Notes: generated from the sequence alone by a model not told the origin. A stretch of DNA of 64,000 nt from Schmidtea polychroa (GCA_044892525.1 CM097885.1:59272001-59336000); one strand, 5' to 3'; counted from the first letter of the stretch, positions 2,449-44,029 are shown. A program made the numbers and translations.

Positions 2449-4247
2449 ATGTCTGAGAAGAGAAGAAAAATCGAACGTACAATATCAGGTGGGAATCGGA
2501 CTATTTCATTATAAACAATAAAAATAAAATTCAATGCATTATTTGTATGCAAGTTTTGTCGGCGTGTAAGGAGTATAACGTTAAAAGGCACTGTGTATCA
2601 CTTCATAGCGAAAAATTTGACTCGTATATCGGAGAATCCAGAACATCGATCATTGAAAAGTATAAAAAAGACGTGATGCACCAAACCACATTTTTTATGA
2701 AACTCAACATCACAGAAACGGAAAGCCTTGCTGCTTCATATTCAGTGGCATTAAAGTTAGCAAAGTCCAAGAAATCATATAGTGATGGTCTTTTAATAAA
2801 GAAATGAGCAATTGAAATGGCCAAACAATTTAATGAGCCGAAAATAGCAGAAAAATTCAACACCGTGGCATTATCTCATCAAACCATGGCCAGGAGAGTG
2901 GATGATATGAACCAACATGTTTCCAAAAAGCTGCTGCAAATGATGGAAAAATGTAGATATTTTTCCCTGTGTTTGGATGAGAGCGTTGATTTGACAGATA
3001 TTAGCCAGCTTTTAATATTTGTTCGTACTATTCAAAATGATTTCACTGTCAACGAAGAGCTCCTTAGCCTAGAATCTCTGTATGACACCACCAAAGGGAG
3101 CGACATTTTTGAAGCTGTCCATAAAAATGTTATGCTATATGGAGGATTCGATAAGTGTTCATGTATTATTACAGATGGGGCCAAAGCTATGATTGGAACA
3201 GAAATTGGCTTTTGCGGATTATTGAAGAAAAATAACATTAAATGTCCAACTCTGCACTGTATAATCCACCAGGAAGCACTGTGCGGAAAAAATTTACGAC
3301 AAGCCCATGCTATGAAAGTAGCAATAAAAATAACAAATATGATACGAGGCGGTAACAGATCCCTCACCCATCGTAAGTTTCGGAGTTTTTTAGAGGAAAT
3401 GGATGCTGCATATGGTGATTTGACAATTCACACAGATATTCGCTGGCTGAGTGCTGGAAAATGTTTAGAACGTTTTTTTGCTATACGAAAAGAAATACCA
3501 ATATTTCTCCAAAATGAAGTAAAGTCTGATACCGAAGAACTTGCTCGTCAAACGCAGGATCCTATATTTTTAGTTGACCTTGCATTTATAACTGACATGA
3601 CCAACCATTTAAACACGCTGAACTTAAAACTACAAGGTAAGGGGCAGAATATCGCAAACCTTTATTGCTATTGCAAAGGTTTCAAGAGTAAATTGCAGTT
3701 ATTCAAATCAACATTGAGCAATAATGATTTTACTTTCTTCCCTAATTGCAAGGCGCATTTTGAAGACATGAATAATTCCGAGGTCACAATATTTTTAACT
3801 CATGTGGAATATATTGATGGGATAATCGCGGAATTCGAAAGCCGATTTATCGATTTTGGAAAATTTGAACGAGAAATTTTACTTTTTAGTCAGCCTTTAA
3901 CTATTAGTATTGCAAATGTGCCGTCCGATTTGCAGTTAGAATTATGTGAGTTTCAAACTGATCCCCAGTTTACCAATAAATGTGAAACAGGGGAAGACTT
4001 TTTCAAACTATTATCCGAAGTAAGATATCCCAAATTGCGTGACTTTGGTCTTAAAATCGGATCAATGCTCGGCAGTACTTATCTTTGTGAGAGTACTTTT
4101 TCCACTATGAAGTTTATTAAATCAAAGCATAGAAGTTCCATGACTGATAAATCGCTATCAAATTTACTGCGTTTGGCAACCACAAACATTGAAATTGATA
4201 TCGATACACTGGTAAACGATGCAAAGCTACCGAAAATTTCTCATTGA
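2449..4247 (+). pseudogene. hAT transposase with BED-like zinc finger, DDE core and dimerisation domain; one frameshift near 2480 and a TGA at 2805
   Basis: Motifs seen: CIIC...KRH...H zinc finger, LCLDESVD, ITDGAKAM, HCIIHQ, RWLS, YLCESTFS. The 476-aa ORF 2817-4247 is uninterrupted. Confidence 0.9.
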
Positions 4248-22326: not shown

Positions 22327-22759
22327 CCAAAAAAATTTTAAAGAATAAGTCTGATTTAGCTATAACATTTGATACTATTATTTTTGTATTAAAAAAAATA
22401 ATAGTGAGTATTTGATAAATTTAAAGAAGAGTGTTTTGATTTTTGCGCCTACACGGATTTGTATTAGTTTGAGGCGATCTCTTATATAGTAATCTGCCCC
22501 TAAGGTTTTTAAATACCCGAACTATTTGATTATCAAGATATCGAATACATAAAAGATAAATTATCCGGATAATGAAAACAAAAAATAAGACAAGAAAAAC
22601 TTTTTTGTGGTATTTAATTCATTTATGTATATTTTTCGTGTATTCATTTGTATACATAGTCACAAAATAACAAAAATAGTAACAAATCATAAAATAATAA
22701 TAAAAAATAGAATTATTAATAAATTTAATTAAATTACTGAAGTTATTGATTCATTTTTA

Positions 22760-23829: not shown

Positions 23830-24105
23830 TATTGATTTGCTTCGCTTCACCAACCCCGTTAGAACGTGGGGTTAATGATAAAGTAAATATCCAGGGTATT
23901 CTTGGACAGTACTAAGATTCAGTTTATATGTTTATATGTTTATATGTTAATATGTTTACATAACTATGATAAAAGATAATAGCATAAACCATATAACTAC
24001 AAAAGAATAAAAACAATAAAAATTTTTTAAAAAATAATAAAAAAAAAGAAAGTAAAATTCGGATGGAGGGGACCCTTAGTTTTTTTTATATAGAAAGAGA
24101 TATTA
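23830..24105 (-). mobile_element. Short interspersed Helitron/HINE-like repeat, copy 1
   Basis: Reverse complement of the copy at 60510 (ATCTCT.TATAT.AAAA..CTAAGGGTCCCCTCCATCCGAA ... GGTGAA.CGAAGC). Contains an internal tttatatg microsatellite. Confidence 0.6.
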
Positions 24106-24243
24106 TTGTGGATTTATTGATTGATACCAAAATCCATGAAGAATACGATTGATAATTTTAAAGATAATTTTAAGATGATAATTATTACATATTTTTTATT
24201 AAAAAACTTATTTTTAAATGAGATGTTTAACAATGACATTTAG

Positions 24244-24767
24244 GTATTTCAACTAACAACATTTTCTGGTGATCTAAACTATTCAAATTTTGGACCAAGA
24301 TACAGATTTGGAATATTTATAGTCAACGTCTCCTCCGATTATACAAATTTTGATAGACATATTTTATTTACAATTGACCGATATCTTAGTGAATTGCAGA
24401 CTACCATGAGAGAACAATTTATCCTAAAAACAACATGTGGGAGAAATTACGCGGGAAGAAAATGTTGGTATAGGTGTATGAGTTCTTTCCGCCTGACTTG
24501 TAATTGTACAGCTAATTACGAGCCGGATGTCATACCGTGTCGGGCATATTGTAACGTTGGTATAGTTTATGATGTACTGATTTTTTATAATAATATACTT
24601 ATTAGGCTGGTTAAAACAATATAAAGAAATCCAAGTAGATACATTTAGTAATATTATTGTCACCTGTGATTCACTAGACATATGTATTAATAAATTAAGT
24701 TCGATTGCTGTAAATTGCCCTGGTCCAAAATTTTGTCTTCCAGTTGATAATAAAACTTATTATTGTG
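24244..24767 (+). CDS. Two exons (24244-24559 and 24636/9-24767) encoding a C2/MNNL-like strand region, a DSL-like start and an EGF-like cysteine module
   Basis: Open frame ...QFILKTTCGRNYAGRKCWYRCMSSFRLTCNCTANYEPDVIPCRAYCNV|DTFSNIIVTCDSLDICINKLSSIAVNCPGPKFCLPVDNKTYYC. GT-AG junctions are phase-compatible. Confidence 0.65.
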
Positions 24768-25974
24768 GTATGTATAATTATGAAAAGTTTATTAAATTTT
24801 AATTAAAAATTATGAAATGGCCGTTTAACATTGAGGGTGGTACTTTGGTGTTCTCATATTTTGAAGGCGATTGGTTAATCCAAACTATGACTTTTGCAAA
24901 TTCGTGTCAAGTAAATTTTTTTGACCATGAATTTCATGGCATGAAATATGATATAAACCTAAGTTCGACTGTGCGTACGGAACGTACGGTAATTTTTATG
25001 CGGAAAGACATACTATACGCGTATAACCTTTAATTATAAACGTTGTAAACGTTAGAAAAATGAACATTTCTTGATTTACAATGTGAAGTCAAAACGCAAG
25101 TAACACTTCTCTAATGAAAAACATTTTCACTGCATAAATTTATAGTTTCGATTTCATTTGTAAATTCAGCTATTTTTGAATAACTTTCATCTTCAATGTC
25201 CATAAACTCATCTCCTAATTCGTGTTTTGTACGGGTATTATCCTAGCTTCTCCGTTTAGTAAAACTTTCTTTATCGCTTCATTTTGATCAAGGTTGGATA
25301 AATTTGACAGATATCTTAAATTAGTGATAGTACAGGTGTTGCATCTTTCTTGAAATGTAATAGTGCCATTACAATATCACCCCCAACAACTCCTTTCACT
25401 GAAATGTCTAGATCACATTCTTCTATACTAAGTCCATCAGATTGTAAAATAGATGGCTTCATTTGCCAAAGATTAACAAATTCTAATAATTCTGTTTGGT
25501 TTTTATCCATTTTAGTAAAACTATAACTAAAACTCAAAATCATCTTGAAAATAAAACATTTATCGTTCCTTCATTTTTGGCCAATATTACCAGACATTTC
25601 AATTCAATTACTTCAATTCGTAAGCCACAAATAAAACTGAACACTAACTAAATAAAAATAAAAATACAAACGCCACATGACCAGATGTCGCCCACGAAAG
25701 ACCAACTCCACTTTATGACCACAAAGGTCAGAAATGAGTAAGACATGCCCAAGAAATAGAAAAAAGAAAATTACAGACAGCAACCTCAACTCTAAAAGCC
25801 TTACTAAAGAAAAGCTTAGGATTTTCGTTTTCCAACTTTGAAACTCCACATACATACATATATACAAAATCTATCAGAATTGACCAGGGACAAAGGTTTA
25901 ATATTCATAAAAGTGATTAAAATTGTAGTTATATATAATAAAAATATAAAATTTGTCATTTTATTTTAATTTAG

Positions 25975-26298
25975 AATATCTACAGGTCAGACTCATACAT
26001 CCCGGAATGTCAGAAAATATTTCGGCTGAAGTATTGTTTTATGAAGAAGTTTTGAATTCAAACTTTGATAGGGAAAGTGTCAAACAAAAGGATATTTTGG
26101 AAAATTTTACAGACTCTTTGGATAAAGCAGCAATAGTCTTTTACGGTAGTATATTATCAACGCCGGCACAAGGGAAAGGTGATGTCTTTCAAGTTGTTAG
26201 TTCATCATATCCCGATAAAGTATTTTTCTTTTCCTATATCCTGAATTTCTTGTCATGGGAAAGGGTTATAATCATAAATCGACATTTCCGAATTTACG
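25975..26298 (+). CDS. Phase 1-1 exon (108 codons) of the same putative cell-surface gene; beta-rich, no cysteine
   Basis: tttaatttag acceptor, gtaatt donor, fully open, in phase with the neighbouring exons. Confidence 0.6.
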
Positions 26299-26794
26299 GT
26301 AATTAGTTATTTATTTAGTTATTTGATTTATAAATTTATTACATTGGCCTATTTTTACCTATACATATGGTGAGCATACACCTTTTATTTAAGAGAATAG
26401 TCGTTTAATCCACTGTTATTTTCGTAATAAATGTTATAAACTTATGAAATTTATAAGGCATTTTTTAATTTTCTTCGATATGTCCTTTATTTTCCCAAAA
26501 CGATTATGGTGACCTTACCTATACATAATAAATGTAAATGTAAAATAAATATATAATATCATAATATCAACATATATAATTACCATTGTACGTACGTATC
26601 GTGTGTTCATACGTACGTTATCAGCATATATTATTATAAAAGTAGTGACTTCATTTAATTTTTATTCAATATATGAATGAATAAATTAGAATGAATAGCT
26701 CAAAATATGAAAACAATATATGTATATTGTTTGGTTTGAATTATAAATGACTCATTCAAATTCTAACATGGTGATAACACCGTGACCAATAATG

Positions 26795-29400
26795 CAGTTA
26801 AGGCGAACTGGGCGGTCGCCTATTACAAAATGTGTAATCGCCATTATTAAAAAATAGCTAATAATAAATAACTTTGATTATATTATATAAACTATAGACA
26901 CAGAGTAATATAATAAGATAATTATTGTATTTAAAATAAATCTTTTAATTTCGAACATTGCAGATGGTTATCGAATTTTAATATTGATTTAGAGATCGCT
27001 CCAGCGCATGACGCGGCGTTCTAAAACACGTGAAATTTTGATTTTTAATTCTGCCGAGAACCGTTCTCGGAGAGAACGTACTTTTCGATGTTATTGTTTG
27101 TGTATCATCATTTTTATCGCACACAACGAAATACAAACAGTATAAAATAAAAGAGAAGAATGTATTTCAGAGTTTGATATTATGATGCAAAGCGAATGCT
27201 CACATGAAATTAAATCCAGTACCAGTGCCACGATTAATTATGTAGATTACAATGACTCATGCAACTGGGTAATTTTCGTCAGATTTTATTAAAAAATCCA
27301 CCACATCAAATTATTACATATAATTTTCCCAAAGATTCCAAAAATCGAAAATTTTCTTCAATTCACTACAAGAGAAAACTAGCCAATGGTGAAGAAGTAT
27401 ACCGTTCATGGTTGATATATTCAACTATAAAAGATGAGGATTTTTGATTTGCTGCAAGTTATTTAACAAAAACAGCTCTTCAATCCTAGAAGAATCAGGA
27501 TCAAAAGACTGGAAAGATATTGGAGCAATTCTATCTTCACATAAAAGGAATACTTTCCATTTAAACAACTTTCAGACGTGGAAAGAACTTGATGTGCGTA
27601 TATTCAAAAAAAACAATTGATAATATTAACCAGCAGAATATCAAAGAACAATATTGGCGGCAAATATTTGAACGTTTGATCGCTTAGATCAGAGTACTTG
27701 CCACTCAAAACTTAGCATTTCGTGGAACAAATGAAAAGTTGTACAATAACAACAACGATAATTTTTTGAAGTTTGTAGAATATCCAGCCCTCTTCGACCC
27801 TGCAATGAACGAAAATTTGCGCAGAGTCAAAAATCAAGACATTATGGTACATTATCTGGGAAAAGATATTCAAAATGAACATATGCAGATCCTAGCAGGA
27901 GCTATTAAAAATAAAATTTTGTCACTTGTGAAATTGGCAAAATATTACTCAATTATTTTGGATTGCACACCAGACGTTAGTCATATTGAACAGATGACTA
28001 TGATTATACGTTTTGTTGATATTATCAAACCGTTAGATAGTGAGATATTCGAGCCTGCAGTAATAATGAGAGAACAGTTCCTAGTATTTGTTTCATTAGA
28101 AGAAACTAATGGGGCATTCATAACAGAAATTTTGATTAAAAAGCTTGAGCAAATGGAATTACAAATTGAAAATCTCCGTTGGCAAGCGTATGATAATGGA
28201 AGTAATATGAAAGGAAAAGAAAAAGGTGTACAATACAGTATTCTACACATAAACCCGCGAGCCTTTTTTATTCCCTGAAATGCACATTCTTTAAACTTAG
28301 TTGTTCATGATGCCTCTAAATGTTGGGTAGAAGCGACTAATTTCTTCAGTTTAGTTCAACATATTTATAATTACTTCTCTGCATCGACTCAGCTTTGGCA
28401 TGTGTTTACTAGCCATATCTTGAATTTAACAGTTAAACCATTGAGCAAAACAAGATGGGAAAGTAGGATGCTTTATATGATGCTTTAATGGAGATTTTTG
28501 ATGACCCAAGACTAGCAATACTTCCCTAACGGACGCAAAGGCTCTTGCTGATGCAGTTTGTAAATTCAAGTTTATGGTATCCCTTGTCACATAGTACAAC
28601 ATTCTTAATGAAGTGAATGTTACAAGCAAAATACTACAAAAAGAGGATTCTGCTATAAATTCAGCTACAAAACAACTTCAAGTGACTAAGAATGACCTCT
28701 TAAAATGAAGGAGTGTTAATGGCTTTGAACAAGTTTTAATTGATGCTGCCGAGATTGCAAAGGAATTAGAAACAGAAACGAAATTTGAGCCCGGTAAATG
28801 TAGAAGAAGGAGACATAAACGGCAGTTTGAATATGAAGATCAAGACGAGGCACCACAAGATCCTAAACATAAATTTAAAATAGAATTCTACTACACTATC
28901 TTGGACATGGCTATACAGTCTATTGAAGAGAGGTTCCAACAATTAGAACAACATGATATTTTATTTGGCTTCCTTTATAATATATCCAATATCAACAAAA
29001 AGACATCTGCGGATATACTTACTGACTGCAAACATTTAGAAACGTCTTTGACGCATAAAGATAATAAAGATATTGATTCTTATGATCTTTGTAATAAGTT
29101 TCAAAGCCTTCCAAAGCCGATGTCACTATCAGATGTGCTCCCCTATATAGTACAACAAAAATTGGAAGATTGTGTACCAAATGTTGTTGTTTACTTGAGA
29201 ATAATAGTAGATAGATATGTCCCTTCCACACCATGTCCCATTCACTCCACTACCTACCTTGGAGATTTTTTTTAAAACTCGGAATTTTATAACGAACAAG
29301 AAAATAAATAGTCTATATATAGAAATGGAAATGAGCTCCAAAGTCTCTAACTTCAACATCAAATGCCATAATTTAACATCATTCATAAATTATCAAACAT
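26795..29400 (+). mobile_element. Decayed hAT transposon (ZMYM1-like/Blackjack-type transposase)
   Basis: Fragments include KRKLANGEEVYRSWLIYS, YYSIILDCTPDVSHIEQMT, AYDNGSNMKGKEKGVQ, LKPLSKTRWESR and PNVVVYLRI. A subterminal GGCGAACTGGGCGGTCGCC motif lies at the left end. Confidence 0.85.
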
Positions 29401-29770
29401 AGAAAATCTTATATTATAGAAATAAAATCATATTCTTCAACACACGGTGAGACAATGAACAATAAAATACTTAGAAATTTTGTTTTAAAAAATATGAAAG
29501 TACTTTAAAGTGAAGGTCACACTACTTAGAAATTTTAATATATATTTTAATNNNNNNNNNNNNNNNNNNNNNNNNNNNNNNNNNNNNNNNNNNNNNNNNN
29601 NNNNNNNNNNNNNNNNNNNNNNNNNNNNNNNNNNNNNNNNNNNNNNNNNNNNNNNNNNNNNNNNNNNNNNNNNNNNNNNNNNTGGTTCGTTCAAATTCTA
29701 ACGATATTCTTGGTAAATTTTTATGATCGTAATATTTAAATAGAAATTAAAATTAGAATTTTTATTTTAG

Positions 29771-30058
29771 TCAGGCCAACACTTATCAAAGTTTATCGGT
29801 TTGACAATGATACATCTGTTAACACCTACATTCACATTGGAGAATATATAACAGGAAAATCTGATGCAGCACCTAAATACAGATACATTATACTTTGGAA
29901 AAGTAAATCTATTCAATTTGTATTCCCTGTCGGTGACAAAATTCAAATACCTTTAACAGCAACACCAGGAATAAGCACCATGAATTGTACATGTATACTA
30001 ATTACAAAGGGTCGTAATATTACATTCGCTTGGAAAATATTTACATTTTTTGTTAAAC
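29771..30058 (+). CDS. Phase 1-1 Ig-like exon (96 codons)
   Basis: VRPTLIKVYRFDNDTSVNTYIHIGEY...IILWKSK...MNCTCILITKGRNITFAWKIFTFFVK. ttattttag acceptor and gttagt donor. Confidence 0.6.
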
Positions 30059-30949
30059 GTTAGTAAGAGTTGCAATTATAAATATTAAATTTTAATTGTC
30101 TTGTCAATAAAACTCTGCAACTAATGATTCCCTTTATCTATATTTCTTTTCGGACTAGATCCATATATTTTAACAAATATTGAAAAATTATTAAATATTC
30201 CATATTCACAACATTAAATATTTAAAATTTAAAGTGATTTAAATATCCATGTAAATTTATTGTGTAATAATTTTTTTCCGGTGATAATAGAATTTATCAC
30301 TGTTTCCCAAACTTTTGGTACTGCGTACCACATTGATCATTTTCATTATATAATGTACCCCTTGGGTTTAAATTTTTTTTGGTTAATATCTAAAATTAAA
30401 GTTGAAAAGGAATTATTATGAAACAGTTGGTTTAAATTTAAATAAAGATTAAATTTATAAAATAATTCTAAAAATAAATTTAAAACGAAGCGATTTATAT
30501 TTAATTACATTTATATAAAAGATTTACTTTATGCTTTGATTTTTAATCTTAGTTTATTTTTAAAAATATATTATTGATTCGAAAATATAAACAATAAATA
30601 AAAAACAAGATTATATTTATATTTTTCTGTATTAATAAAATTTTAATAAGACATTTTAATCTAATTAAATTTTTTTTATTTATCTTTTAATATTTAGATA
30701 ATAGAAGATTGAAAAAGCCTTCTTACCCCCAAAAGATCCATCGCGTACCCTGGTTTGGAAAACTTCAATTAAAATAATCTCGAATTTTCTAGAAATGCTG
30801 ATATAAAAAATCAATTGGAATATTTTACTGTTATCAGTAAAATCCATTATTTTTTGATTACTTTTGATAGATTTTTGTTTCATTTTAACAAATTATTTTC
30901 CCAATGTAACATAAATTTTCGACATTGCATTTTTTCAAATGTTATTGAC

Positions 30950-31520
30950 ACTTGAAAGAACAGTTTTTTGAAATTTTGTGTTGCATTGAAAAGATAGTGT
31001 GATATATAGTCGAAATGAAAATGAATGAAATGTTTTAATAATGTTTAGTAAGACAAAATATGATAAATAAGGATAAATATTGAAAGAATAACGAATAGAT
31101 TATGTTAACTTTAGCAGATAAAAATACAGATAAGTATAAATCTGCTGTATAAGATGATTTTCTTAAATATATTGCATGTGTTTTAGATTATCTACTTAAA
31201 ATCTTTAAAGACACATGGGGAATTCTGTACACGTTTGCGTTTCGGAATTATAAAATGATGGAAATGGTCTCAAAGAATTCATTTTTTGCTAGTACTGACC
31301 AATTGAATGATGATGAATTGCTTCAGGTTTCCATATTCCTATAGAAGGAATTCATTAAAATCTTCAAAAATATTACGGTGATTAAATACAACGATGTTTC
31401 GATGCATTCTGTAGGAAGAAAATTTATAAGGACATTCTCATTTTTTGAATTTTTTTCCAAATACAGAGATATAGAGTGCCGTAATCGACATGATACAAAA
31501 ATGTAATGTATGTAATACAC
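30950..31520 (+). mobile_element. Possible degenerate DNA transposase C-terminal relic
   Basis: Decayed coding-like sequence (DFLKYI..VLDYL.K.F...). Family not identified. Confidence 0.3.
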
Positions 31521-31880
31521 AGTGTGATATATTGATAAAATGTTTACAAAAGTTATTTAATTTTAATTTAAAAAGTTTTGAAAATAGTCCATCATTACCC
31601 AAATGAACGCATGTGATACGGCCGCTATAATATCGCCCGAACGCAACAAGCCGTATACCGTATGTTCAGGTACAAAAAAATATATATTTGATAAAATATT
31701 ATAACAGAAATTATTCGGTGACATCTAATGAAAAAAAACGATGTTTTTTTTACCTAATTTATGAATCATAACCCAAATTTTAAAATTGATTTTTAATTTA
31801 AAATTGAAAAAAATTAAAATTTCAAAACTATAAAAACAACCTTAATTTTCTTTCATTTTTAAAATAAAAATTTTATTTAG

Positions 31881-32129
31881 TTTTCGAATATTTGGAATGG
31901 AATAATACAGATAATATAATTAATGATAATACGGCAATCGCGTGCTTGGCACTGGCGTACATTGACTACCAATTAAGTATTGTACAACTTTTTGGTCCGT
32001 CCCAAATTAAAGTGACTAAAAATTATATAACCATTGAAAGTTCTCAAGGAGGATCTTATGAATTTGTTTGTTACTTCCTTTCAACACTCGGTTATCAATA
32101 TTCCTCTTATCTAAATTTTAAACTAAGAG
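31881..32129 (+). CDS. Phase 1-1 Ig-like exon (83 codons)
   Basis: FEYLEWNNTDNIINDNTAIACLAL...YITIESSQGGSYEFVCYFLSTLGYQYSSYLNFKLR. Paired B- and F-strand cysteines; ttttatttag acceptor and gtataa donor. Confidence 0.65.
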
Positions 32130-32727
32130 GTATAACGTTTTATTTTCATTATTACTAGATAATTATAATTTTAAAAGTTATATCCCAGTGTAGTTAGATA
32201 AAACCGAAACCATTAAAATAATATTTAATATTAGTATGTTATCTTACCAATGTTACCTTCAAGTTTCAAATGAACTCTAAATTATTCTTTCCCAACTGTA
32301 GGTCGTAGAACGCCTTGGGACTCTTCACAAATATCGAAATATTTTTAAATTTAAATTAATATTTTTATTAGATTTTAAATAACAACGATAAAATACAATT
32401 AAATAATAATAATAATTTTAATTAATTATTGAGTTTGTTCAACAATTAATTATCTGACTCCCTGCGTTCGATATTGCTGTTAAACAAGGCTCGCTTTGGA
32501 ATCAGATTAATAACTGGCAACAACCCCAACAATTTAATTTTCCAATCTTGATTTGAATTTATGACCTCTTCTTGTATATCACATAGATTTGGACGATTGA
32601 TATCGCTAGAATTTATTTGTAACATTGAAATTTCTAATAAATGATTAAATTTTCAGATTTTTTATTTCTTGTTTATTCTCACATTTTATGTCTCTTTACT
32701 TTTTCCTTCTGGTTTAATAGTTTAGCT

Positions 32728-35066
32728 CAGTGATTCTTAACCTTTTGGGGGTGTGGAGCACATTTGATTTTATAATATTTTCCCGGAGCATCAGAACTAA
32801 TATATCAATTCCAGTAATAATAAATAAATTTAATTATTAAAAACAACAATACTTATTCTTAAAATATTAATGTGATATTTGAGCCTGACGAGTCTTACAT
32901 ATTTTACCAATATTAGCCTGATTTGGAATATTGCTACCCTCATTTCCTCTTCTATGTCTTTAAGTCTTTCTCGTTTTTTATTTTTAATATTGTTCAATGT
33001 TGAGAATCCAAATTCAGAGAGATATGAGGGGGAAAATTGCAATAAAATCTTAAGAACTTTTTTAGATAGAGATGGAGTCAAAATCCAAAAATTTTCAATC
33101 GATATTTCTGTGGACTTCATTTTGAGAGAGCGATCTGTAGTCTTCTTCCTGTAAAGATAATTCTGTATTTGAAGATTCAAATATATCAAACGGGTTTCGT
33201 ATCCAGTCATAGGATTCTAATTTAAGAGATGGAAAGTAAAACGCGATTTTTTGATCTAATATTGTTAGATGTTGTATAATTGCAGGAACAATATCTGTAA
33301 TATTTTCCGTTTGAATTGAATGAAACATATCAAATGAGTTTTTTACTGTTATTCTACTTTTCTAGTACAACATTTTTTTGTTAAATGCTAGCATTTTGTC
33401 TGTGGATGTTAAAACATTTTCATTTTTTCCTTGAATAATTGTATTCGGTGAATTTAGGTATTTGAAAATATCGGCTAAATATGCTAATTTAGCATACCAA
33501 ACATCATTTTCAAGAAATTTAGCAAATCTATCTATGGCTACATCTTGAAAATATTCCAGCAATTCATCTTTAAGCTCCAATAAACGGCATAAAACTTTAC
33601 CTCGAGACAACCATCTAATTTCAGTATATAAAAGCAATGTTTAAAAATTCATGTCTGTAGAGGACTTGATTTGATATAGTTCACTATTTCTACAGGTTCA
33701 TCTAATACAGATTTTAATGACAGTGGTAATGTTTTTGAAATTAAAGCTTATCGATGTAAAAATCAATGTATAGAGATAATATCTGGATTTTTTTCCTTAA
33801 TTAGTGCCACACATCCTTTAATAAATCCTGCCATTGATGGACATCCATCTGTACAAATTCCTACACTCAGATCCTATGACACTTAAGATTTTTCTAAATA
33901 TGTAGTAATACAGTTAAAAATATCTTTTTCTGTTGTGTTTGGTAAGCCTCTTTGTAGCAAAGGGATTGATTTATTATTTCCTTTTCATCAATGAAGCGAA
34001 CGAATGTAAGTAATGGGGCTTTGTTGCTAATATCAACAGATTCGTCAATTTGCAAAGCAAAATATGTTTTGAAAGTTTACTATTAACTGATTCTTTAATA
34101 TCATTTGACATGTGCTTTATTCTTTTTTTAATTGTATCATTAGAAAGGGGAATCTTCATTATTTCATTTTTTGCATTATCACCACACATAATGTTAACTA
34201 TTTCACAACATGACGGTAAAATAAAACTTTCTGCTATATTATGTGGTTTTAATTCCAATGTAATTAATTCTGCCACTTTTTATGAGACAAGTTAAGCTTT
34301 TTCAGAAATTGTGATAGCATTTTTAAATCGTTTTGCTTGCTTACTTTGTATATCCAATAGATTGTGAAAATAATCTTTGTTTTTTGAAACTAAATCCATA
34401 TGTTTAGTAGTAAAGTGACGCTTCAATTTAGCAGTAAATAGCACTATTGAACAGCTTTTCACCGCATACAATACATTAAGGTATTTGACAATCACTTTCA
34501 CCGGTCCATGTAAACCCAAAACAAATGTATTCATCAGAATAATGTCTATTAATTTTTTTTTATTACATATGTCATCCGTTGTATTGTCACTTGTAATACT
34601 AGTGAGACTTGTATTTGCTTCATCATTAATATTTTGAATCGAATTACTTTTTGGTTTAAAAAATTTGTCCATGATACTATTTTAAATAAATTTTGAATAA
34701 AAACAAATAAATTTATATTTGCTTACTTTTCGTTACAAAATAGGTAATTGGTTTATATTGCAAATGTTTAATGATTAAAAAAAATAATATATTAAAACGA
34801 ATAAACTTTAATCGTTTTTATATATAATTTTTTTTTACTTTTAGTAAATGGTTAAAAGCAGGTAAGATACTTACTCAATCGATTTTTTAATATTTCTTAA
34901 AAATCGATTCAATTATAAATAAACTGAATAGCACATTTTCTTACAAGTTCACAAAAATTTATGTTCAAATAGCGACACGATTACAAACTTACAAAATTAA
35001 TATATTATAACTTTAATTTAATATAATTTTTGGGCGGAGCATCTAAGATAAAGTTGCGGAGCACAG
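32728..35066 (-). mobile_element. hAT Buster-type (ZBED5/SCAND3-like) transposon, decayed
   Basis: Perfect 8-bp TSD gtttagct at 32720-32727 and 35067-35074; CAGTGATTCTTAACC terminus; fragments LKRHFTTKH, IPLSNDTIKKRI, LLYTEIRWLSRGKVL, YLSEFGFS. Confidence 0.9.
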
Positions 35067-35788
35067 GTTTAGCTTATCAATTCCACTTGGGTACATTTCA
35101 CTGATCATTCTATTATCCATTCGTATTTTCCATTACAATTTAGATTTTTTATAATAACTTGTCGATATAAGGAATCATTTATAACAATATAATTTAAATA
35201 AATAACTAGGTAGACCATCTTGCTATTTAAATAAAATCTGGTGACTTCAAAACTTTTCACCGTTATATTTAAAATTCGTCCCAACCACATAGCTCACCTT
35301 AAAATTCAACTTTAATAACGTTTTTGTTTTTTTCCCATTTAATATTTAATTAATATTAAATTAAAATAATAAATTCAAAGTGTAATTTGTGGTCCCGTAA
35401 AATGTCTTGGAGCTATTCACAGGATATTTCAAAATATTTCAGTATTTCCAAATTGAAATTAATGTTTTATAATAAATGCATTTTTCAACTTCAATAACAA
35501 TAATACATTTACTGTCAACCACGAGTATGCTCTTACTATTTTAAATGTATTTTTATGACAAGCGTTTACCATTGGCAAGCCAGGTTTGACATAAGACATA
35601 AATTTGGGAATGCGAACTGACAGAATTTATTAAAAAAAACCAAACTGTATTTAGAATAATAAACAAAATTTCGAATGCAAATAAAGTTAAATAATTTAGA
35701 GTGGTAACAAATGCTATAAGCGATAGTAATTACAATAAATAATTTATCATATATTTTAAATTTCATAGTACATGTATTTTAATTTTAG

Positions 35789-36064
35789 TTTATGCATCTC
35801 AGATCTGTTTCTTTCTATACGCAAATATAATGGGCTCCATTGTACAATGTAGCCACAATGGCTTTCTTCAAGACGAGTATGAAACAACAGTTAGTTATTT
35901 TACGCTAACCAAATCTGATTATGAACTTAAAGAAGAGAGTCGAAAATATCTTCGAATTCCGTATAATTTAGAACATAAAGGCTACAAGGTTGTTTGCCAA
36001 GTAAAAGGCATAATTAAAATCAACGTATCCATTCAATTCGAAATTAAGAATGAATTATATTTCA
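35789..36064 (+). CDS. Phase 1-1 Ig C2-set-like exon (92 codons)
   Basis: VYASQICFFLYANIMGSIVQCSHNG...YLRIPYNLEHKGYKVVCQVKGIIKINVSIQFEIK. Two cysteines in canonical Ig spacing; ttttag acceptor and gtattc donor. Confidence 0.65.
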
Positions 36065-36519
36065 GTATTCATTATATTTTTGAATTATTTTAAATTTATA
36101 TTTTATTATTTTAAATATTTGGAAATAAATTTATATATTTGATTTTATAAATTAAATATAATGTAATAATCTAATTTTAACTTGTAACTGTTGTTTAACT
36201 GCTTTTAACTGCGATCTCAGCTACTATATTTTTATAACGATTAAAACAAGCAAACATCGACTAAAACTTTTGTAAACAAAATTCTATTTTGGCCCGAGGG
36301 CAAAACATGTAAAACAATTTAATTGTCAACGTGATAACTATAAATTCAAACCTTAGATCCAAATATCCACTTTGAAGGATTTTATAAAAATTAAAAAATG
36401 GTGTTTTTATTATTTAAATTTATTATTTAAAATTTAAAAAACTATTGACAGATGCCAGTAATTTCGCATTAGGCGCGGTATTAGGACAGTAAGTAGAAGG
36501 GGAGAAAATCATGTAATTA

Positions 36520-36728
36520 CTTATACCAGCAGATCATTGAAACCTCGTGAAAAGAAATTGCAACGACCGTTCAAAGGACCATATCTAGTATGCGACACGA
36601 CAGAGACTAATTTAAAACTGCGTCCACAAAACAATAAAAATGCTGGAACAATCATCGTTCATATAAATAGATGCAAAAAGATATTAGCAGAAGATGAATC
36701 ACGTTATCCATTGAGATCAAAGCAATAA
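36520..36728 (+). mobile_element. Gypsy integrase C-terminal (GPY/F) fragment
   Basis: KKLQRPFKGPYLV...IIVHINRCK. Confidence 0.7.
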
Positions 36729-38050
36729 TCGACATATAAATATAACCTATAAAAGGTAGATCTTACTTAAAATTTATGAAATAAAACGAAACAAATTAGG
36801 CTGGACAAAAAATAAAACTTTAAAATAAAATTTTTATTAAACTACTTATTTATTATGAAGTTTTACAAAATTCAAATCGTATTGAAAGGAAATTAATCAA
36901 ACAAAATATTTGAAAATCAAATAAAAACACCTAGTTATATTTTCTCCATTGTTCTTTTGGGTCAGAGTCGAGTTCTCGTATTAAATCAGCATATATCAAC
37001 ATCAGTAAATAGTATTAAATCAGTTCTATCTCAGCGATTGGAGACAGAATTTATTAATAACGGGTTATCGCTATTGAATGAAAATCTAGTGTTAGATTCT
37101 CTTTTAAATGGCTTCTTTTTTTCTCAGTTGCAAATTTAGGAGACCATAAATGAGGTAGAGGCAACAAGAAATATCCTAATTTTAAAATTTTTTTCCAGCA
37201 GCATTTAGTCATAATTACATATTCAAATTTAAATTGAACTATTTCATCAATAATCAAAAACAAATTTCAAAATCAAAAACAAATTTCATCAATAATCAAA
37301 AACAAAATTACAATTCCTATCCAAATCAAACAAGTTTGAAAACATTTGAAAACCATTCTTCCGCTTTGATGCTGAATTTCTATATTCATGTACACAAAAG
37401 TTATCATTTACAAAGTGTTCGAAATTATACTAATTTTCTATATTTTCGAACAATTAAAGCTTTCTGAATTAGAAGACGTTATATTTATTTGATCAATTAT
37501 GCTAATATATAATCTATATTTTAAAACTACTCCGCTGCTGGCATCTATTTTGGAATGAATTTTATTGGGAGATTTGTTGTCATAATATGATAATGAATTT
37601 TTGAGTAGCCAATAGAAATTGATCTCGTCTGTTTTTCTGAAATTCAGACAAATGAATAAGAAAATAAGTAAATAAGAACTAAATCCTACTGTGCTTGTAT
37701 GTGAATAAAACGGGTAGGCTCACGAAATTCGTTCAACTGCCCTGCCCTCTCATGGGCATTTTCGGAGAATAATTGAAAAATTTTTTAATTTTATTAATTG
37801 ATCAGTAAAAATTTATTTTAATTGGAAATTAATTTAAATGGTTTATTTATCTAGTTTAAAAAGAAAAAAATCTATTTTAATAATAGGAAATTAATTTAAA
37901 TGGGTTTTGCTATTATTTATTTAGCTTATAAATATTATCATAATTCAATAACTATTTAATATTATTGTTATAATTATTATATTATTGTGTTCAAAAATTT
38001 ATTTCAGATCTGGTTATTTAGCTTTCTATTTTTGTCAGTTTGTGAATTAG

Positions 38051-38051
<1 letters not shown>

Positions 38052-38121
<70 letters not shown>
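38052..38121. repeat. (TTA)n microsatellite; a degenerate (AAT)n tract lies at about 42440-42555
   Basis: Direct reading of the sequence. Confidence 0.95.
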
Positions 38122-38449
38122 CGATCCCAGAACTGAATAGAAGAAAGATTTTAATANNNNNNNNNNNNNNNNNNNNNNNNNNNNNNNNNNNNNNNNNNNN
38201 NNNNNNNNNNNNNNNNNNNNNNNNNNNNNNNNNNNNNNNNNNNNNNNNNNNNNNNNNNNNNNNNNNNNNNNNNNNNNNNNNNNNNNNNNNNNNNNNNNNN
38301 NNNNNNNNNNNNNNNNNNNNNNNNNNNNNNNNNNNTATTACAAGTAAATAATAAGATAAAATTTTATTTACTTAAATTAATTATTATTATTATATTTATT
38401 AAAAAGAGAATTGGAAGGAAAAAAGTTCTTATAATATTATTATTATCGT

Positions 38450-39330
38450 TATAGTAAATTGGAATTATTATAGACTTGCAGATTTGAGGACGAATTTAAA
38501 TTGAAGGGGGAGATATGTTGAAGTTCAACAAAAGAGGTACAAAAATGAGGTGGAAAATCAATTGAAACAACAAATTCACAATAATAATTTAAAGTACAAA
38601 AAATTAATTTAAAAAAATCAAAAAAAGTAAAAATGAATATTTTCCCAGGAAAACTGGCATGGACGGATGCTGAATAATGATACGAGTTCAACTATAATAA
38701 AATAAAATCAATCAGGGGTCCATAGAAAGAATTAATTACAAAAAACTAACATTAATTAACTAATGGGAAACCCGAGACAATGGAAAACCCGAACGATGTG
38801 AGAGAATCTGAATTGTCAAATTAGTAGAGCCAATTAAATTGGGGCAAGCGGTCAAAGAAGACGGGCGAATTCCTCAAAGTAATTAGAGCGACTAGAGGAA
38901 GTCCAGGGGGAAATGGATCCGAACTAATTTAACACAGTAAAATCAAATTACGAGATGGGTATAAAAGCGACCGCCAAGTAAACATAATTGCCAGTTGGTC
39001 GAAGAAAAGTTAACGAACAAATTTGCAAGAGTAAAACTAAGGAAATTTTGAACTTAGTGTAACTGAATATTTTAAAATCGAATGTACCAGAAAGGGGCAT
39101 CTCCCATTGGAAGATTTATCCCTACGTAAGATTTACAGTGGTATTGAAAAGTGCAGACCAAAAATGATTGTATCACGTATGGTTGAATCAATAAAAAGTG
39201 TAACCAAAGTGTAATTGTATTAGTCTTGAATAAAGATTTTTGTGTTACGTTGTTTAACTTGATTTCAAAAAGAACACAAAGGAGGAATTGAAGCAACTCA
39301 ATTCCAGGAAATTGTAAAGGACTATTTTTA
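38450..39330 (+). mobile_element. LTR-like segment homologous to the reverse complement of 41340-42191
   Basis: Shared blocks such as AATAATAATT(T)AAAGTACAAAAA, ATCCCTACG...TATTGAAAA.(A)GTGCAGA and ATAAAA(A)GTGTAA; contains TATAAAAG. Confidence 0.5.
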
Positions 39331-39687
39331 TAGGTGAAAGTTCTTTCATTTTATTAAATATATACTTCGCAGCAAAAGACTTAAATTATCATTTAATTGT
39401 TTGATATTGAAGATTATATTAATAATAGTTATAAATTAATTATTATTAAATATTTAATTTANNNNNNNNNNNNNNNNNNNNNNNNNNNNNNNNNNNNNNN
39501 NNNNNNNNNNNNNNNNNNNNNNNNNNNNNNNNNNNNNNNNNNNNNNNNNNNNNNNNNNNNNNNNNNNNNNNNNNNNNNNNNNNNNNNNNNNNNNNNNNNN
39601 NNNNNNNNNNNNNNAAATTATCACAAATAAATTAAACTAATGTACTTTTAATTTCAAGGTCATACTAATGGATGAAAACCCCTATAA

Positions 39688-40206
39688 AATCTACTAAGTC
39701 ACTCAACCGTGAAATATCAAAATTTAATTATTTTGATTAATACCTTTATTGGATTTTTTTTATTTTCTTTAGCTACTCGCCACAGATATATTATCAGTGA
39801 ATCCAATAAAATATGTCTTCGATACGATTCATATATCGAAATGCCAACCATAATCAAAATAAGTGAAAAAGGTGTCATGTTGGCTCATTTAATATTTCAC
39901 TTACATGAAAATGAATCCTTTTACTTTGTCGTGATTCCAATGTGTCTTTTAATGTCTGCATTTCCATTTATAGCAACTGGGATTATTACTGATGTCGCCG
40001 CTCAGCTGCACGAAGAATCCGTTTTGCTGAAAGCTCAGACTAAAAAGAAAATTAGAAAATTGAGAATTAGAGCACTGAATGATAGAATTCGCAAAGAAAT
40101 GAAGTACCCAAGTGTCTTAGTAAATCATGAGGAATTTTATAAGGAAAGTTTCATAAATAAACGAGTTTCGGTTATCAAAATGTTAAGCAATTATGAATCA
40201 TTTTAA
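39688..40206 (+). CDS. ORF with two hydrophobic segments; C-terminal part of an unidentified multi-pass membrane protein
   Basis: 165-aa ORF from the track; the frame opens at 39688, shortly after an N-gap. Family not securely identified. Confidence 0.45.
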   Translation, partial: NLLSHSTVKYQNLIILINTFIGFFLFSLATRHRYIISESNKICLRYDSYIEMPTIIKISEKGVMLAHLIFHLHENESFYFVVIPMCLLMSAFPFIATGIITDVAAQLHEESVLLKAQTKKKIRKLRIRALNDRIRKEMKYPSVLVNHEEFYKESFINKRVSVIKMLSNYESF

Positions 40207-40691
40207 ATTTAATATGATTCTTGATATTAATTCTAAAGTGAAATTTTATTAAAAATATAAATCGTAATAAATATTTAATAATTCATTTTATTAAAAATTA
40301 ACCGCCTATAATCTGGTTAATGGTTGAAAGAATTTATTTCAAAAAAAAGAGGAAAAAAAGTATGTAAAGAAATTTAAAAAAGATTTAAAGACTTATTTCG
40401 AAACTTGGAAAAATTTATAAAATTATTGATAATAAATATAGTATATAAAATAAAAATATATTCAGTCTTAATTATTTTAAATCTAAAAATATAAAAATAT
40501 AAAACACTATTAGTAAAATGTCAAAAAATTGCTATTGAACTTCCTAAAAAAGCAGTTTTTGACATTTTATGTGCTTGACAGTGTTTCAGTGTGAAATGCA
40601 TTATTTGTTTTATTGAGTTATGAAAATATAAGAAGATTCAGAAGAAGAAATCACAAAATTTCTTAATTAAAATTAAAAAGATATAACTTAA

Positions 40692-42191: not shown

Positions 42192-44029
42192 TCGAAACCC
42201 AACACATACAAGAAGAAACATCCGAAGTTGCTAATATTGAAAGAGGTGTGTACATTTATGAAACAGATGAGCCGATATCATGCGTCTCAAGTTCGAGTTT
42301 TATCTACAAATCTAAAATTTCTATAAATCGAAGTGTTGGGACAGAAGGCCGAAAAATTCCGAGAAAATTCCGTCAGAGCAAACCACATAGCAACGAAAAC
42401 CCCAAGAATTCGATGTAAAATCGTAACAAGAAAGCTGATAATAATAATAACATTGGCGATAATATTGATAATAATAATAATAATAAATAATATTAATATT
42501 GATAATAATAATAATAATAAAAATAATAATAATAATAATAGTAATAATAATAAAGTTTAATGGGTTGAGTATGTGTGTAAAAATAAATATTTAGGNNNNN
42601 NNNNNNNNNNNNNNNNNNNNNNNNNNNNNNNNNNNNNNNNNNNNNNNNNNNNNNNNNNNNNNNNNNNNNNNNNNNNNNNNNNNNNNNNNNNNNNNNNNNN
42701 NNNNNNNNNNNNNNNNNNNNNNNNNGAAACTTTGAAAGTATTATTTGGTGTTGTATATAGTTTATTTGAATAAATTTACTGATAGGTGTGCGTGTAATGT
42801 ACCAACATATTTCGTCACATTTTCAGGATTTTGGGTCTAGAATTCAGTTCTAGCCATACAATTGTTTTCTTTGACATTCTTCGACAACTTTATTCAAATA
42901 TTCAAATAACTTCTTTTTGCTTATTTCTCAACTAATTCTTTTCTGAATATCTTTTCCAACAATTATTCTTCACAATTATTCTCCAACAAATCGTTATCCA
43001 ATAACTACTAGTCTCAATGACTATAAATTTCTCTCACAATTTCTCTTTAATTTTCTCCATTAGTTTTATCTCCTTTTACCGTAGACTCTTACCTCGTCTT
43101 CCGTTTCGTTTTACAATAAATTTTCGTCTGATTTTTGCCTGATTTTTATGTCAATTTCTCGGCCAACAGTTCCTCGTTTCATTTGTGCACTAGAGATAAT
43201 CTAATGTTTCCCATTTCTCTTTCTTTCGCATTTCCCGACTATTTCCATTTCATCTCTGACAGATGTCGCTATATATTTTGCTTTTTTCCCTTCTTTTTGT
43301 TAGGCCAACTTCTCTTGGCAATTCCGATATCTCTGACAAGCTGTCAGGATATCCCTTTTTCCTTTTGTTCTGTTTTTGGAATTTGAAATTCCTTTTCTCC
43401 TTTGTACTAATTAATTAATAATGACCTTTGTTTTGCTTTCTTGTTTGTTTTCTTTTGTTTGGTTTCTTTTTTTCATTTTCCATTTCTTTTTACTTTCTTT
43501 TTCTTCTAATAGTTCCCCTAAATCATCCCGTTTTTCATAACGATTTTCTTCCAGTTAATTTACATATTTATTATATTATTTGCTATTTAAGTATTCTCAA
43601 CAGTACCAACGTGTCTCACCTACATGGGTATGCAGCTGGTTGATTGCAACAGTCATATTTGGTGCTCTAGAGTATACTGCGCAAGATCCTTAGTGCTTTA
43701 CCGAATTCCTTGAAAGTGATCTAAGTCTGATAAGGTAAAGGCCACTAGGACACCAACAGAAGATTATAGAGGATGTGTTTATGACACAAATTTAAAACAA
43801 TTAAATACATTGAAAATGATGATCAAATTTTTAATTTTTTCAAATTTTTGGGTGAGCTGAAAAAAATAAGGAATCATTACAAGGTTATTCATTTTTATAT
43901 TTACATCTATTCATTTTATATCGACATTTTTGTTAATTTTTATATTGAATAATATTTTTATATCTCTATATTTACCTATCTCTCGCAAAGAGAGAAAAAA
44001 CATTACAAGAGAAATTTATAACATTGTGC

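What the first reader, a model, noticed from the sequence alone, without database searches (positions are those of the whole stretch)
24244..36064. Cryptic cell-surface gene joining a Notch-ligand-like DSL/EGF module to a string of Ig-like exons
Seen: at least six open plus-strand exons with GT-AG ends that splice in phase (24244-24559, 24636/9-24767, 25975-26298, 29771-30058, 31881-32129, 35789-36064). They are threaded between two hAT insertions, and the ORF track shows them only partly. The first carries LKTTCGRNYAGRKCWYRC, resembling the C..NYYG..C...C start of DSL domains after the C2/MNNL region of Delta/Serrate ligands, but the later GHY.C...G...C part is not canonical. The last four are symmetric phase 1-1 exons of 83-108 codons, and two have Ig-type cysteine pairs. 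Known: canonical Notch ligands carry EGF arrays rather than Ig arrays, and phase 1-1 exons are the typical units of domain shuffling. Inference: a lineage-specific, exon-shuffled DSL-like/Ig adhesion or recognition receptor.
Basis: partly seen in the sequence, partly recalled or inferred. Interest (0 to 1): 0.7.

Follow-up and report, generated by a model that had tools for sequence, protein, structure and literature searches.

The report
DSL-like, Ig-like membrane protein gene
This is a real, transcribed, seemingly unannotated flatworm-type gene for a single-pass cell-surface glycoprotein whose outer part joins a degenerate Notch-ligand-type (DSL-like) cysteine knot to immunoglobulin-like domains; it belongs to a family of a dozen or more such genes that is almost absent from public protein databases.

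Summary
The exons are real. All six proposed exons are open with AG/GT ends. RNA-derived contigs join E2-E3 (24767|25975) and E3-E4 (26298|29771). The E3-E4 join removes the assembly gap 29552-29682 as intron. Two neighbouring paralogues, 30-46% identical, carry the same exons in the same order and phases.

Corrections:
- E2 starts at 24606, not 24636/9.
- A seventh exon (39773-40206) adds a transmembrane helix, a basic tail and the stop codon.
- The 5' signal-peptide exon was not found.

The spliced frame is 682 codons and reads as a type I glycoprotein.

The DSL idea holds only below family threshold. Pfam DSL is the only family hit (9.5-11.6 bits, cut-off 24.2; none for the window copy). 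A profile-profile comparison with this genome's own Delta-like DSL exons gives P 2.5e-5, and 0 of 200 shuffles reach that score. The E1/E2 intron splits the same Gly codon, in the same phase, as in a bona fide DSL-EGF gene of this genome.

E6 folds as an Ig-like sandwich (pLDDT 83), and its Cys pair covaries. E5 has an invariant Cys pair. The folds of E3 and E4 were not tested.

E6-like exons lie at 13 or more loci, mostly in a chromosome-3 cluster. The function is unknown.

The parts
24244..24559 (+). Exon E1 (phase 0 to 1, 316 nt): about 64 beta-rich residues, then a 7-Cys knot with the DSL-like start C-x2-N-Y-A-G-x2-C-x3-C. It cannot be the first exon, because a stop lies just before it and there is no usable ATG.
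   Evidence: Open frame and splice sites. Two paralogues at 31-33% identity with all 7 Cys invariant. RNA contig over 24385-24560. Pfam DSL partial hit in the paralogues. hhalign against canonical DSL exons.
24560..24605 (+). Intron 1 (46 nt, phase 1). It splits a Gly codon between C-x-x and W of the knot.
   Evidence: A bona fide DSL-EGF gene of the same genome (L061) has a 61-nt intron at the same position and phase.
24606..24767 (+). Exon E2 (phase 1-1, 162 nt; start revised from 24636/9): GW..Y, then a 5-Cys module.
   Evidence: Paralogue alignment at 40-51% identity with 5 invariant Cys. RNA joint 24767|25975. E2-like exons also occur in the chromosome-3 cluster.
25975..26298 (+). Exon E3 (phase 1-1, 324 nt): a Cys-free, fast-evolving spacer or domain of unknown fold.
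   Evidence: RNA joints on both sides. Present in paralogue B and paralogue A (E 4e-19 with a profile of the window and B copies).
27259..29402 (+). Decayed hAT-type transposon remnant inside intron 3.
   Evidence: DUF4371 at E 4e-7 on ORF 27739-28278. Repeat-derived contigs of run X7 lie here.
29552..29682 (.). Assembly gap (N). It lies within intron 3, 89 nt before E4.
   Evidence: RNA contigs of X1 and X8 join 26298 directly to E4.
29771..30058 (+). Exon E4 (phase 1-1, 288 nt): beta-rich, with a conserved W and one conserved Cys. Its fold was not tested.
   Evidence: RNA joint with E3 (synonymous C>T at 29772 in the RNA). Weak E4-like exons lie collinear in two chromosome-3 genes.
31881..32129 (+). 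Exon E5 (phase 1-1, 249 nt): presumed Ig-like domain. W6, Cys21 and Cys63 are invariant and GG-x-Y-x-F-x-C is near-invariant across 10 family members.
   Evidence: E5-E6 are joined without an intron in a retrocopy fragment (L023) and in a public protein fragment of a chromosome-3 member (P0003).
32830..34672 (-). Second hAT-type transposon remnant, inside intron 5.
   Evidence: ORF 33365-33640(-) is 31% identical (E 2e-13) to hAT transposase ORF 2808-4244, which passes Pfam Dimer_Tnp_hAT.
35789..36064 (+). Exon E6 (phase 1-1, 276 nt): Ig-like 7-strand beta sandwich, with Cys21 on the second strand (17-22) and Cys70 on the sixth (64-73) forming the pair.
   Evidence: AF2 with 13 sequences gives pLDDT 82.9 and pTM 0.72. 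Foldseek and VIA-align return Ig-like, FN3 and PKD sandwiches, best PECAM-1 Ig2 at Z 8.4. The Cys pair is lost together in 4 of 13 members.
39773..40206 (+). Exon E7 (phase 1 to the stop; outside the finding): juxtamembrane stretch with one Cys, a transmembrane helix at about 39919-39987, a basic amphipathic cytoplasmic tail, and TAA at 40204-40206.
   Evidence: Conserved in both paralogues. Acceptor and in-frame splice, hydrophobic maximum at residues 588-610. Not covered by RNA data here.

Best explanation
The interval is the body of one transcribed gene of at least eight exons (E1-E7 here, plus one or more unfound 5' exons). It encodes a type I single-pass surface glycoprotein of about 700 residues.

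From the outside in, the protein has:
- a short beta-rich segment;
- a degenerate DSL-type cysteine knot spread over E1 and E2. It descends from the same ancestor as the DSL domain of Delta/Serrate ligands, but carries an insertion with extra cysteines, a displaced last cysteine and a changed receptor-facing loop;
- a Cys-free spacer (E3);
- three modules of about 90 residues, one exon each (E4-E6), of which at least E6 and probably E5 are Ig-like sandwiches pinned by a disulfide between the second and sixth modelled strands;
- a transmembrane helix and a short basic tail.

It is one of three tandem paralogues on this chromosome. The wider family has 13 or more loci that evolve fast and are nearly absent from public databases.

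Inferred, not shown: it acts at the cell surface as a recognition or adhesion molecule. The DSL-like head serves as a binding module whose partner need not be Notch.
For: Gene reality:
- Splice sites and phases.
- RNA joints E2-E3 and E3-E4.
- All seven exons are collinear, open and of conserved phase in paralogues A and B.
- The E5-E6 junction is seen in a retrocopy and in a public protein fragment of a family member.
- The spliced frame of 2049 nt is open to a stop codon.

Topology: one hydrophobic 23-mer followed by Lys/Arg-rich sequence. All 12 NxS/T sequons and 20 of 21 Cys lie N-terminal to it.

DSL relation:
- DSL is the only Pfam family matched.
- hhalign of E1 against this genome's Delta-like DSL exons gives P 1.5e-4.
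- The spliced E1+E2 head gives P 2.5e-5 over 67 columns, aligning five of six DSL Cys, NYYG and PGW.
- Its score of 35 exceeds a maximum of 21 in 200 column shuffles and 17.5 for the reversed profile.
- The phase-1 intron lies in the same Gly codon before the Trp as in the DSL-EGF gene L061.
- Three exon-sized Pfam DSL hits (24.1, 20.5 and 17.6 bits) lie in the chromosome-3 family cluster, each upstream of and on the same strand as family exons.

Ig-like fold.

Restriction to the lineage.
Against: - No copy reaches the Pfam DSL threshold. The window copy gets no hit at all, and the direct match covers only profile positions 1-17 of 46.
- The AF2 model of E1 is unusable (pLDDT 50), so the fold and disulfide pattern of the knot are unknown.
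- No MNNL-like exon was found near the trio, and no EGF array follows the knot.
Their link to the family rests on position and strand only.
- The signal peptide was not found.
- The RNA evidence comes from one sample at low depth and covers only E1-E4.
- The fold hits for E6 are generic: Ig, FN3, PKD and MG domains score within one Z unit of each other.
- There are no functional data at all.
Confidence: 0.6

Rival explanations
1. The gene, topology and Ig-like domains are as described, but the cysteine-rich head is an orphan knot unrelated to DSL. On this reading the C..NYYG..C...C and GW resemblance and the intron position are convergent or coincidental, and the protein is simply a lineage-specific Ig-like adhesion or recognition receptor.
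For: - Pfam scores are far below the cut-off and cover only 17 positions.
- A profile of E1 found no Notch ligand among 1.84 billion representatives and none in the PDB.
- The Cys spacing differs from DSL: there are 7 Cys in E1 and the sixth DSL Cys is missing at its place.
- No MNNL was found.
- Short Cys-rich motifs recur by convergence (general knowledge).
Against: - The profile-profile score against this genome's own DSL exons exceeds all 200 composition-preserving shuffles.
- DSL is the only one of 24,736 Pfam families to appear, and it does so in two paralogues.
- The intron position and phase match a true DSL gene.
- DSL hits near threshold sit in the family's chromosome-3 cluster.
Confidence: 0.28
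2. It is a working canonical Notch ligand, a Delta/Serrate orthologue that activates Notch in trans.
For: It is a type I membrane protein with a DSL-like motif near the N-terminus.
Against: - The genome has separate canonical Delta-like genes with MNNL plus full DSL at 44-60 bits.
- This protein lacks a detectable MNNL and any EGF array.
- The segment after the third Cys, where Notch ligands carry the conserved receptor-contact loop (my own knowledge of Jagged-1), is different here.
- The sixth Cys is displaced.
Confidence: 0.05
3. It is a decaying or non-functional locus. On this reading the exons are relics of a pseudogene or of transposon-borne ORFs, and the transcripts are noise.
For: The locus is riddled with hAT remnants. 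RNA depth is low and comes from one sample. One exon gave a weak SH3_retrovirus hit.
Against: - Twenty-one exons across three paralogues, only 30-46% identical, are all open, with conserved splice phases and invariant cysteines.
- The splicing is precise.
- The SH3_retrovirus hit occurs in 1 of 13 family members only.
- The one true retrocopy (L023) looks quite different, carrying 4 stops.
Confidence: 0.04

Closest known systems
Delta/Serrate/LAG-2 (DSL) Notch ligands, Pfam PF01414
   Same: - Type I membrane protein with a cysteine knot near the N-terminus that starts C-x2-N-Y-Y-G-x2-C-x3-C and ends C-x-P-G-W.
- The knot is preceded in the same exon by about 60 beta-rich residues, as in this genome's Delta-like genes.
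- A phase-1 intron lies in the Gly codon before the Trp, as in the DSL-EGF gene L061.
   Different: - Below the Pfam threshold.
- Two extra Cys and a 7-residue insertion.
- The sixth Cys is displaced by a 14-residue insertion.
- The loop after the third Cys is not conserved.
- No MNNL was detected and there is no EGF array. Ig-like modules stand where the EGF repeats would be.
Divergent DSL-family proteins of Caenorhabditis elegans (named from my own knowledge, not tested here)
   Same: A lineage-specific radiation of about ten DSL-motif proteins that depart from the Delta/Serrate architecture.
   Different: Those keep a recognisable DSL plus EGF repeats, and several are secreted. None is known to me with Ig-like domains. 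No sequence link was tested.
Immunoglobulin-superfamily cell adhesion molecules (for example PECAM-1 Ig domain 2, NTB-A, CEACAM, SYG-2)
   Same: The E6 model is a 7-strand sandwich with a Cys pair on the second and sixth strands. The best structural match is PECAM-1 Ig2 at Z 8.4, rmsd 3.1 over 85 residues. Each domain is one exon with phase 1-1 borders.
   Different: No Pfam Ig, I-set, V-set or fn3 hit at E up to 10. FN3, PKD and macroglobulin domains score within one Z unit. Sequence identity to any hit is 15% or less.
This genome's own DSL-EGF gene on chromosome 2 at 1.22 Mb (L061)
   Same: Same intron position and phase inside the knot, and a short intron (61 against 46 nt). The spacing C-x5-C after the knot aligns with the end of DSL and the start of EGF1.
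   Different: L061 passes Pfam DSL (29.4 bits) and continues into a regular EGF repeat. The similarity to the head over 123 columns is weak (P 0.005 with a single sequence).

Membership tests
DSL domain (Pfam PF01414) | Score at or above the curated gathering threshold (24.2 bits) | tested here: not met
   Window E1 gets no hit. Paralogue A scores 11.6 bits and B 9.5 bits, on profile positions 1-17 of 46 only.
DSL domain (Pfam PF01414) | Significant profile-profile similarity to bona fide DSL domains over the whole domain | tested here: inconclusive
   The spliced E1+E2 head against six DSL exons of this genome gives probability 75%, P 2.5e-5 over 67 columns. The score of 35 compares with a maximum of 21 in 200 shuffles. 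This is suggestive but below the usual 90-95% probability.
DSL domain (Pfam PF01414) | Six cysteines in DSL spacing, with the YYG and GW-x-G-x2-C motifs | tested here: not met
   Five of six Cys align, and NYYG/NFYG/NYAG and PGW/DGW/VGW are present. However, two extra Cys occur and the sixth Cys is missing at its place; a Cys follows 14 residues later.
DSL domain (Pfam PF01414) | DSL fold and its disulfide map | tested here: inconclusive
   The AF2 model of E1 with 5 sequences has pLDDT 50 and is unusable.
Canonical Notch ligand (Delta/Serrate architecture) | N-terminal MNNL/C2 domain (PF07657) before the DSL domain | tested here: not met
   A genome-wide MNNL search hits only two canonical Delta-like genes and nothing near the three paralogues. 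The 5' exon or exons of this gene are, however, unknown.
Canonical Notch ligand (Delta/Serrate architecture) | Array of EGF repeats after the DSL domain | tested here: not met
   No EGF family hit on E2-E7. E2 has only four further Cys after the knot.
Canonical Notch ligand (Delta/Serrate architecture) | Binding to and activation of Notch | not testable with these tools
   This needs binding and signalling assays.
Immunoglobulin-like fold | Seven-to-nine-strand Greek-key beta sandwich | tested here: met
   E6 only: pLDDT 82.9, seven strands. The top matches are all Ig-like, FN3 or PKD sandwiches, with TM 0.5-0.7 and Z up to 8.4. E3, E4 and E5 were not folded.
Immunoglobulin superfamily (Pfam ig, I-set, V-set, C2-set) | Sequence-profile match to an Ig family | tested here: not met
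   No Ig-family Pfam hit at E up to 10 for the window exons E3-E6 or for the 13 E6-like sequences.
Immunoglobulin superfamily (Pfam ig, I-set, V-set, C2-set) | Conserved intersheet disulfide and a Y-x-C motif before the second Cys | tested here: met
   E6: Cys21 lies on the second modelled strand (17-22) and Cys70 on the sixth (64-73). The two are lost together in 4 of 13 members, with one exception. E5: Cys21 and Cys63 are invariant, with Y-x-F-x-C, in 10 members. The bond itself is inferred.
Type I single-pass membrane glycoprotein | Signal peptide, one transmembrane helix, positive-inside tail, glycosylation sites outside | tested here: inconclusive
   The transmembrane helix, the basic tail, and 12 of 12 sequons before the helix are met. 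The signal-peptide exon was not found.

The most novel reading that the evidence does not exclude
The family is a flatworm-specific radiation of non-canonical DSL proteins, in which a remodelled DSL head is carried on Ig-like domains instead of EGF repeats. These proteins would bind the expanded set of planarian Notch receptors, or other EGF-repeat proteins, in cis or trans. That would make them modulators or alternative ligands giving cell-cell or positional specificity. The fast divergence of the tandem copies would then reflect co-evolution with partners.
Probability: 0.1. Interest if true: 0.8.

Novelty: new variant of a known kind. Interest (0 to 1): 0.55.

Why it matters
If the head really derives from DSL, this is an architecture not described for DSL proteins: a DSL-like knot on Ig-like modules, with no EGF array. 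It has multiplied to a dozen or more fast-evolving genes in an animal used as a model for stem cells, regeneration and positional information. The family is essentially invisible in public protein databases, with three exon-sized or fragmentary hits in all, so it is probably missing from gene inventories used for Notch-pathway and adhesion-molecule surveys in flatworms. Even under the cautious reading of an orphan Ig-like receptor family, the work yields a verified gene model, a family census and testable domain boundaries.

Tried and rejected
- AF2 of E1 with 5 sequences gave pLDDT 50 and was not used for fold search.
- ESM Atlas look-alikes of E1 gave nothing above 0.77.
- The Atlas and Pfam hint that E6 is a retroviral SH3-like domain was rejected. 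Only 1 of 13 family members hits it, and the fold is a 7-strand sandwich.
- A profile of E1 against PDB sequences gave only noise: haspin at E about 1.
- hhalign between the E4, E5 and E6 profiles showed no significant similarity (E 0.07-0.5). Recent internal duplication or shuffling is therefore not shown.
- The search for the 5' signal-peptide exon failed. An ATG, hydrophobic stretch and GT scan gave only unconvincing candidates, for example 22572-22649. Comparison of 9 kb upstream of the three paralogues found nothing conserved.
- An MNNL profile search found no exon near the gene.
I did not try to obtain them another way.
- Literature searches on planarians with DSL domains, or with lineage-specific immunoglobulin superfamily genes, found no description of this family.
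- Earlier-findings searches returned only this same stretch.

Full report
**Setting.** The window is C1:59272001-59336000 of a 781-Mb assembly. I did not test the species.

**Observation.** The six intervals are open in the stated frames and carry AG/GT borders. The region 24001-40300 has 25 stop-free runs of 83 or more codons, against 1.9 in shuffles, partly because of transposons. Open frames alone therefore prove little. The decisive evidence is of two kinds.

*Paralogues.* Two paralogous genes lie 30-100 kb upstream on the same chromosome:
- A on the plus strand, 59193610-59208762;
- B on the minus strand, 59263216-59233966.

Each carries every exon in the same order. The exons are 28-51% identical by exon, with the same splice phases and with AG/GT at the corresponding places.

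*RNA.* RNA-derived contigs of one sample (runs X1 and X8) show:
- E1 covered over 24385-24560;
- the joint 24767|25975;
- the joint 26298 to 29773 with TT between.

Since 29771-29772 read TC in the assembly, the last joint is the proposed acceptor at 29771 with a single C>T. The split codon changes from GTC to GTT, both valine.

**The assembly gap.** The gap 29552-29682 lies in intron 3, 89 nt before E4. Two contigs join E3 directly to E4 across it, so no reading frame depends on the unread letters. Two more gaps (38157-38335 and 39462-39614) lie in intron 6. No RNA data cover that intron.

**Corrections to the gene model.**
- *E2 start.* E2 begins at 24606 (tattag|GC), giving a 46-nt intron. 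Similarity to both paralogues starts there. All three genes split a Gly codon at this point. The E1 contig extends one G beyond 24559 and then has three unmatched letters. Among the AG sites in 24561-24640 (sequence), only the exon start GCTG at 24606 fits this.
- *Seventh exon.* A seventh exon, 39773-40206, is conserved in A and B.
- *Spliced frame.* Spliced E1-E7 is 2049 nt, in frame to TAA, and encodes 682 residues. It has one hydrophobic segment (residues 588-610) followed by a Lys/Arg-rich tail. All 12 NxS/T sequons and 20 of 21 cysteines lie before the helix. That is the layout of a type I membrane glycoprotein.
- *Missing 5' end.* E1 starts right after an in-frame stop and has no early ATG, so at least one 5' exon is missing. 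I could not find it.

**Further splice evidence.**
- L023 (C1:27.48 Mb) is a decayed, intronless fragment that runs across the E5/E6 junction (E 2e-13, four stops).
- The only public protein hit of the E6 profile, P0003, is a fragment joining the E5-like and E6-like exons of a chromosome-3 member. In the genome those exons lie 6 kb apart.

**The introns.** Both insertions are hAT-related:
- 27739-28278 has DUF4371;
- 33365-33640(-) is 31% identical to the window's hAT transposase ORF 2808-4244, which passes Dimer_Tnp_hAT.

**The head (E1+E2).**
- *Sequence features.* The seven Cys of E1 and five Cys of E2 are invariant in the three paralogues. The motif reads C-x2-N-[YF]-[YA]-G-x2-C-W-Y-x-C, then later C-x3-C-x2-G|W.
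- *Pfam.* No hit for the window copy. DSL is the only family for A and B, at 11.6 and 9.5 bits against a cut-off of 24.2, on profile positions 1-17.
- *Wider searches.* A profile of E1 against 1.84 billion representatives found just two exon-sized ORFs from one ENA metagenome assembly and no Notch ligand. PDB sequences gave noise. AF2 of E1 failed.
- *Comparison with this genome's own DSL exons.* I took the exons found with PF01414: three Delta-like genes at 44-60 bits and a second class that matches only profile positions 1-35/37. hhalign of E1 against them gives P 1.5e-4 over 24 columns.
- *Spliced head.* With E1+E2 built locally, the match grows to 67 columns, probability 75% and P 2.5e-5. 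It aligns five of the six DSL Cys, NYYG and PGW. The score is 35, against a median of 11 and a maximum of 21.3 in 200 column shuffles, and 17.5 for the reversed profile.
- *Shared intron.* The DSL-EGF gene L061 (29.4 bits) has a 61-nt phase-1 intron in the Gly codon between C-L-I and W-T-G-M-N-C. That is exactly where this gene has its 46-nt intron, between C-N-V and W-L-K-Q-Y.
- *Exon start.* The Delta-like exon L053 starts in phase 0, 60 residues before the first DSL Cys. E1 starts in phase 0, 64 residues before it.
- *Chromosome-3 cluster.* Three of the partial DSL hits (24.1, 20.5 and 17.6 bits) lie inside the family's chromosome-3 cluster, each upstream of and on the same strand as family exons. 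I could not read them.
- *Against a working Notch ligand.* There is no MNNL and no EGF array. The sixth Cys is displaced, and the loop after the third Cys differs.

My reading is a DSL-derived but strongly remodelled knot, with a probability of about 0.6-0.65.

**The stalk.**
- *E6.* Folded with 13 family sequences, E6 gives a confident 7-strand sandwich (pLDDT 82.9). Foldseek on PDB and AFDB, VIA-align and the Atlas all return Ig-like, FN3, PKD or MG sandwiches. The best is PECAM-1 Ig2 at Z 8.4, with many IgSF adhesion molecules just below and non-Ig sandwiches within one Z unit. Cys21 lies on the second strand and Cys70 on the sixth. They are absent together in four members, which points to a disulfide.
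- *E5.* It has invariant W6, Cys21 and Cys63, and a GG-x-Y-x-F-x-C motif, in ten members.
- *E3 and E4.* These were not folded. E3 has no Cys and evolves fastest.
- *No repeat signal.* The E4, E5 and E6 profiles are not significantly similar to each other.

**Family.**
- E6-like exons lie at 13 or more loci: three on C1, about eight on C3 at 6.7-7.3 Mb, two more on C3, and one on C2.
- E5-like, E4-like and E2-like exons lie collinear with them.
- The E1 type with clear similarity occurs only in the three C1 genes.

**Function.** Nothing here tests it. Tandem, fast-diverging, single-pass glycoproteins with Ig-like domains usually serve recognition or adhesion. That is my inference, with a possible but unproven link to Notch-type partners.

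Noticed in passing
window 2457-4244 (+): A near-intact hAT transposase lies here. A Spin-doc type zinc-finger ORF (2457-2804, E 8e-10) is followed by a 479-aa ORF that passes Dimer_Tnp_hAT. A related copy lies inside paralogue B's long E2-E3 intron at C1:59252484-59254209.
   Followed up: partly
window 42862-43602: A roughly 740-bp non-coding element lies 2.7 kb after the gene's stop. It recurs at 70-83% identity shortly after the last exon of paralogue B and at 80% identity 5 kb after that of paralogue A (opposite orientation there). The coding exons are far more diverged. It may be a repeat or a conserved 3' element; this is undecided.
   Followed up: partly
L023 (G000 C1:27483430-27486549), about 1290-1620: A decayed, intronless fragment of a family member spans the E5/E6 junction and perhaps the E4/E5 junction. 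It carries four stops and looks like a processed pseudogene.
   Followed up: partly
window 29772: RNA contigs of runs X1 and X8 read T where the assembly has C. The change is synonymous (GTC to GTT) and sits 90 nt after the assembly gap. It may be a strain difference or an assembly error.
   Followed up: no
G000 C3:37059493-37223007 (L054-L058): Five tandem single ORFs of 528-563 aa each start with a match to the second half of the DSL profile (positions 13-46, 37-41 bits) plus EGF-like repeats, then run on into a long unrelated region. A 1766-aa ORF at C1:248.65 Mb (L059) has a similar match. This may be another unusual use of a DSL-like module.
   Followed up: no
G000 C1:264.63-264.90 Mb and C4:90.92-92.50 Mb: At least 15 near-identical 73-aa ORFs give the same weak DSL-profile hit (positions 12-41, 18-19 bits). 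They form a repeated small Cys-rich ORF family in two arrays.
   Followed up: no
window 9325-10714 (+): A 364-aa ORF plus following pieces has no Pfam hit. It has a 28-52% identical counterpart just downstream of paralogue A (C1:59211226-59213388). It may be a neighbouring gene or element duplicated together with the family.
   Followed up: no
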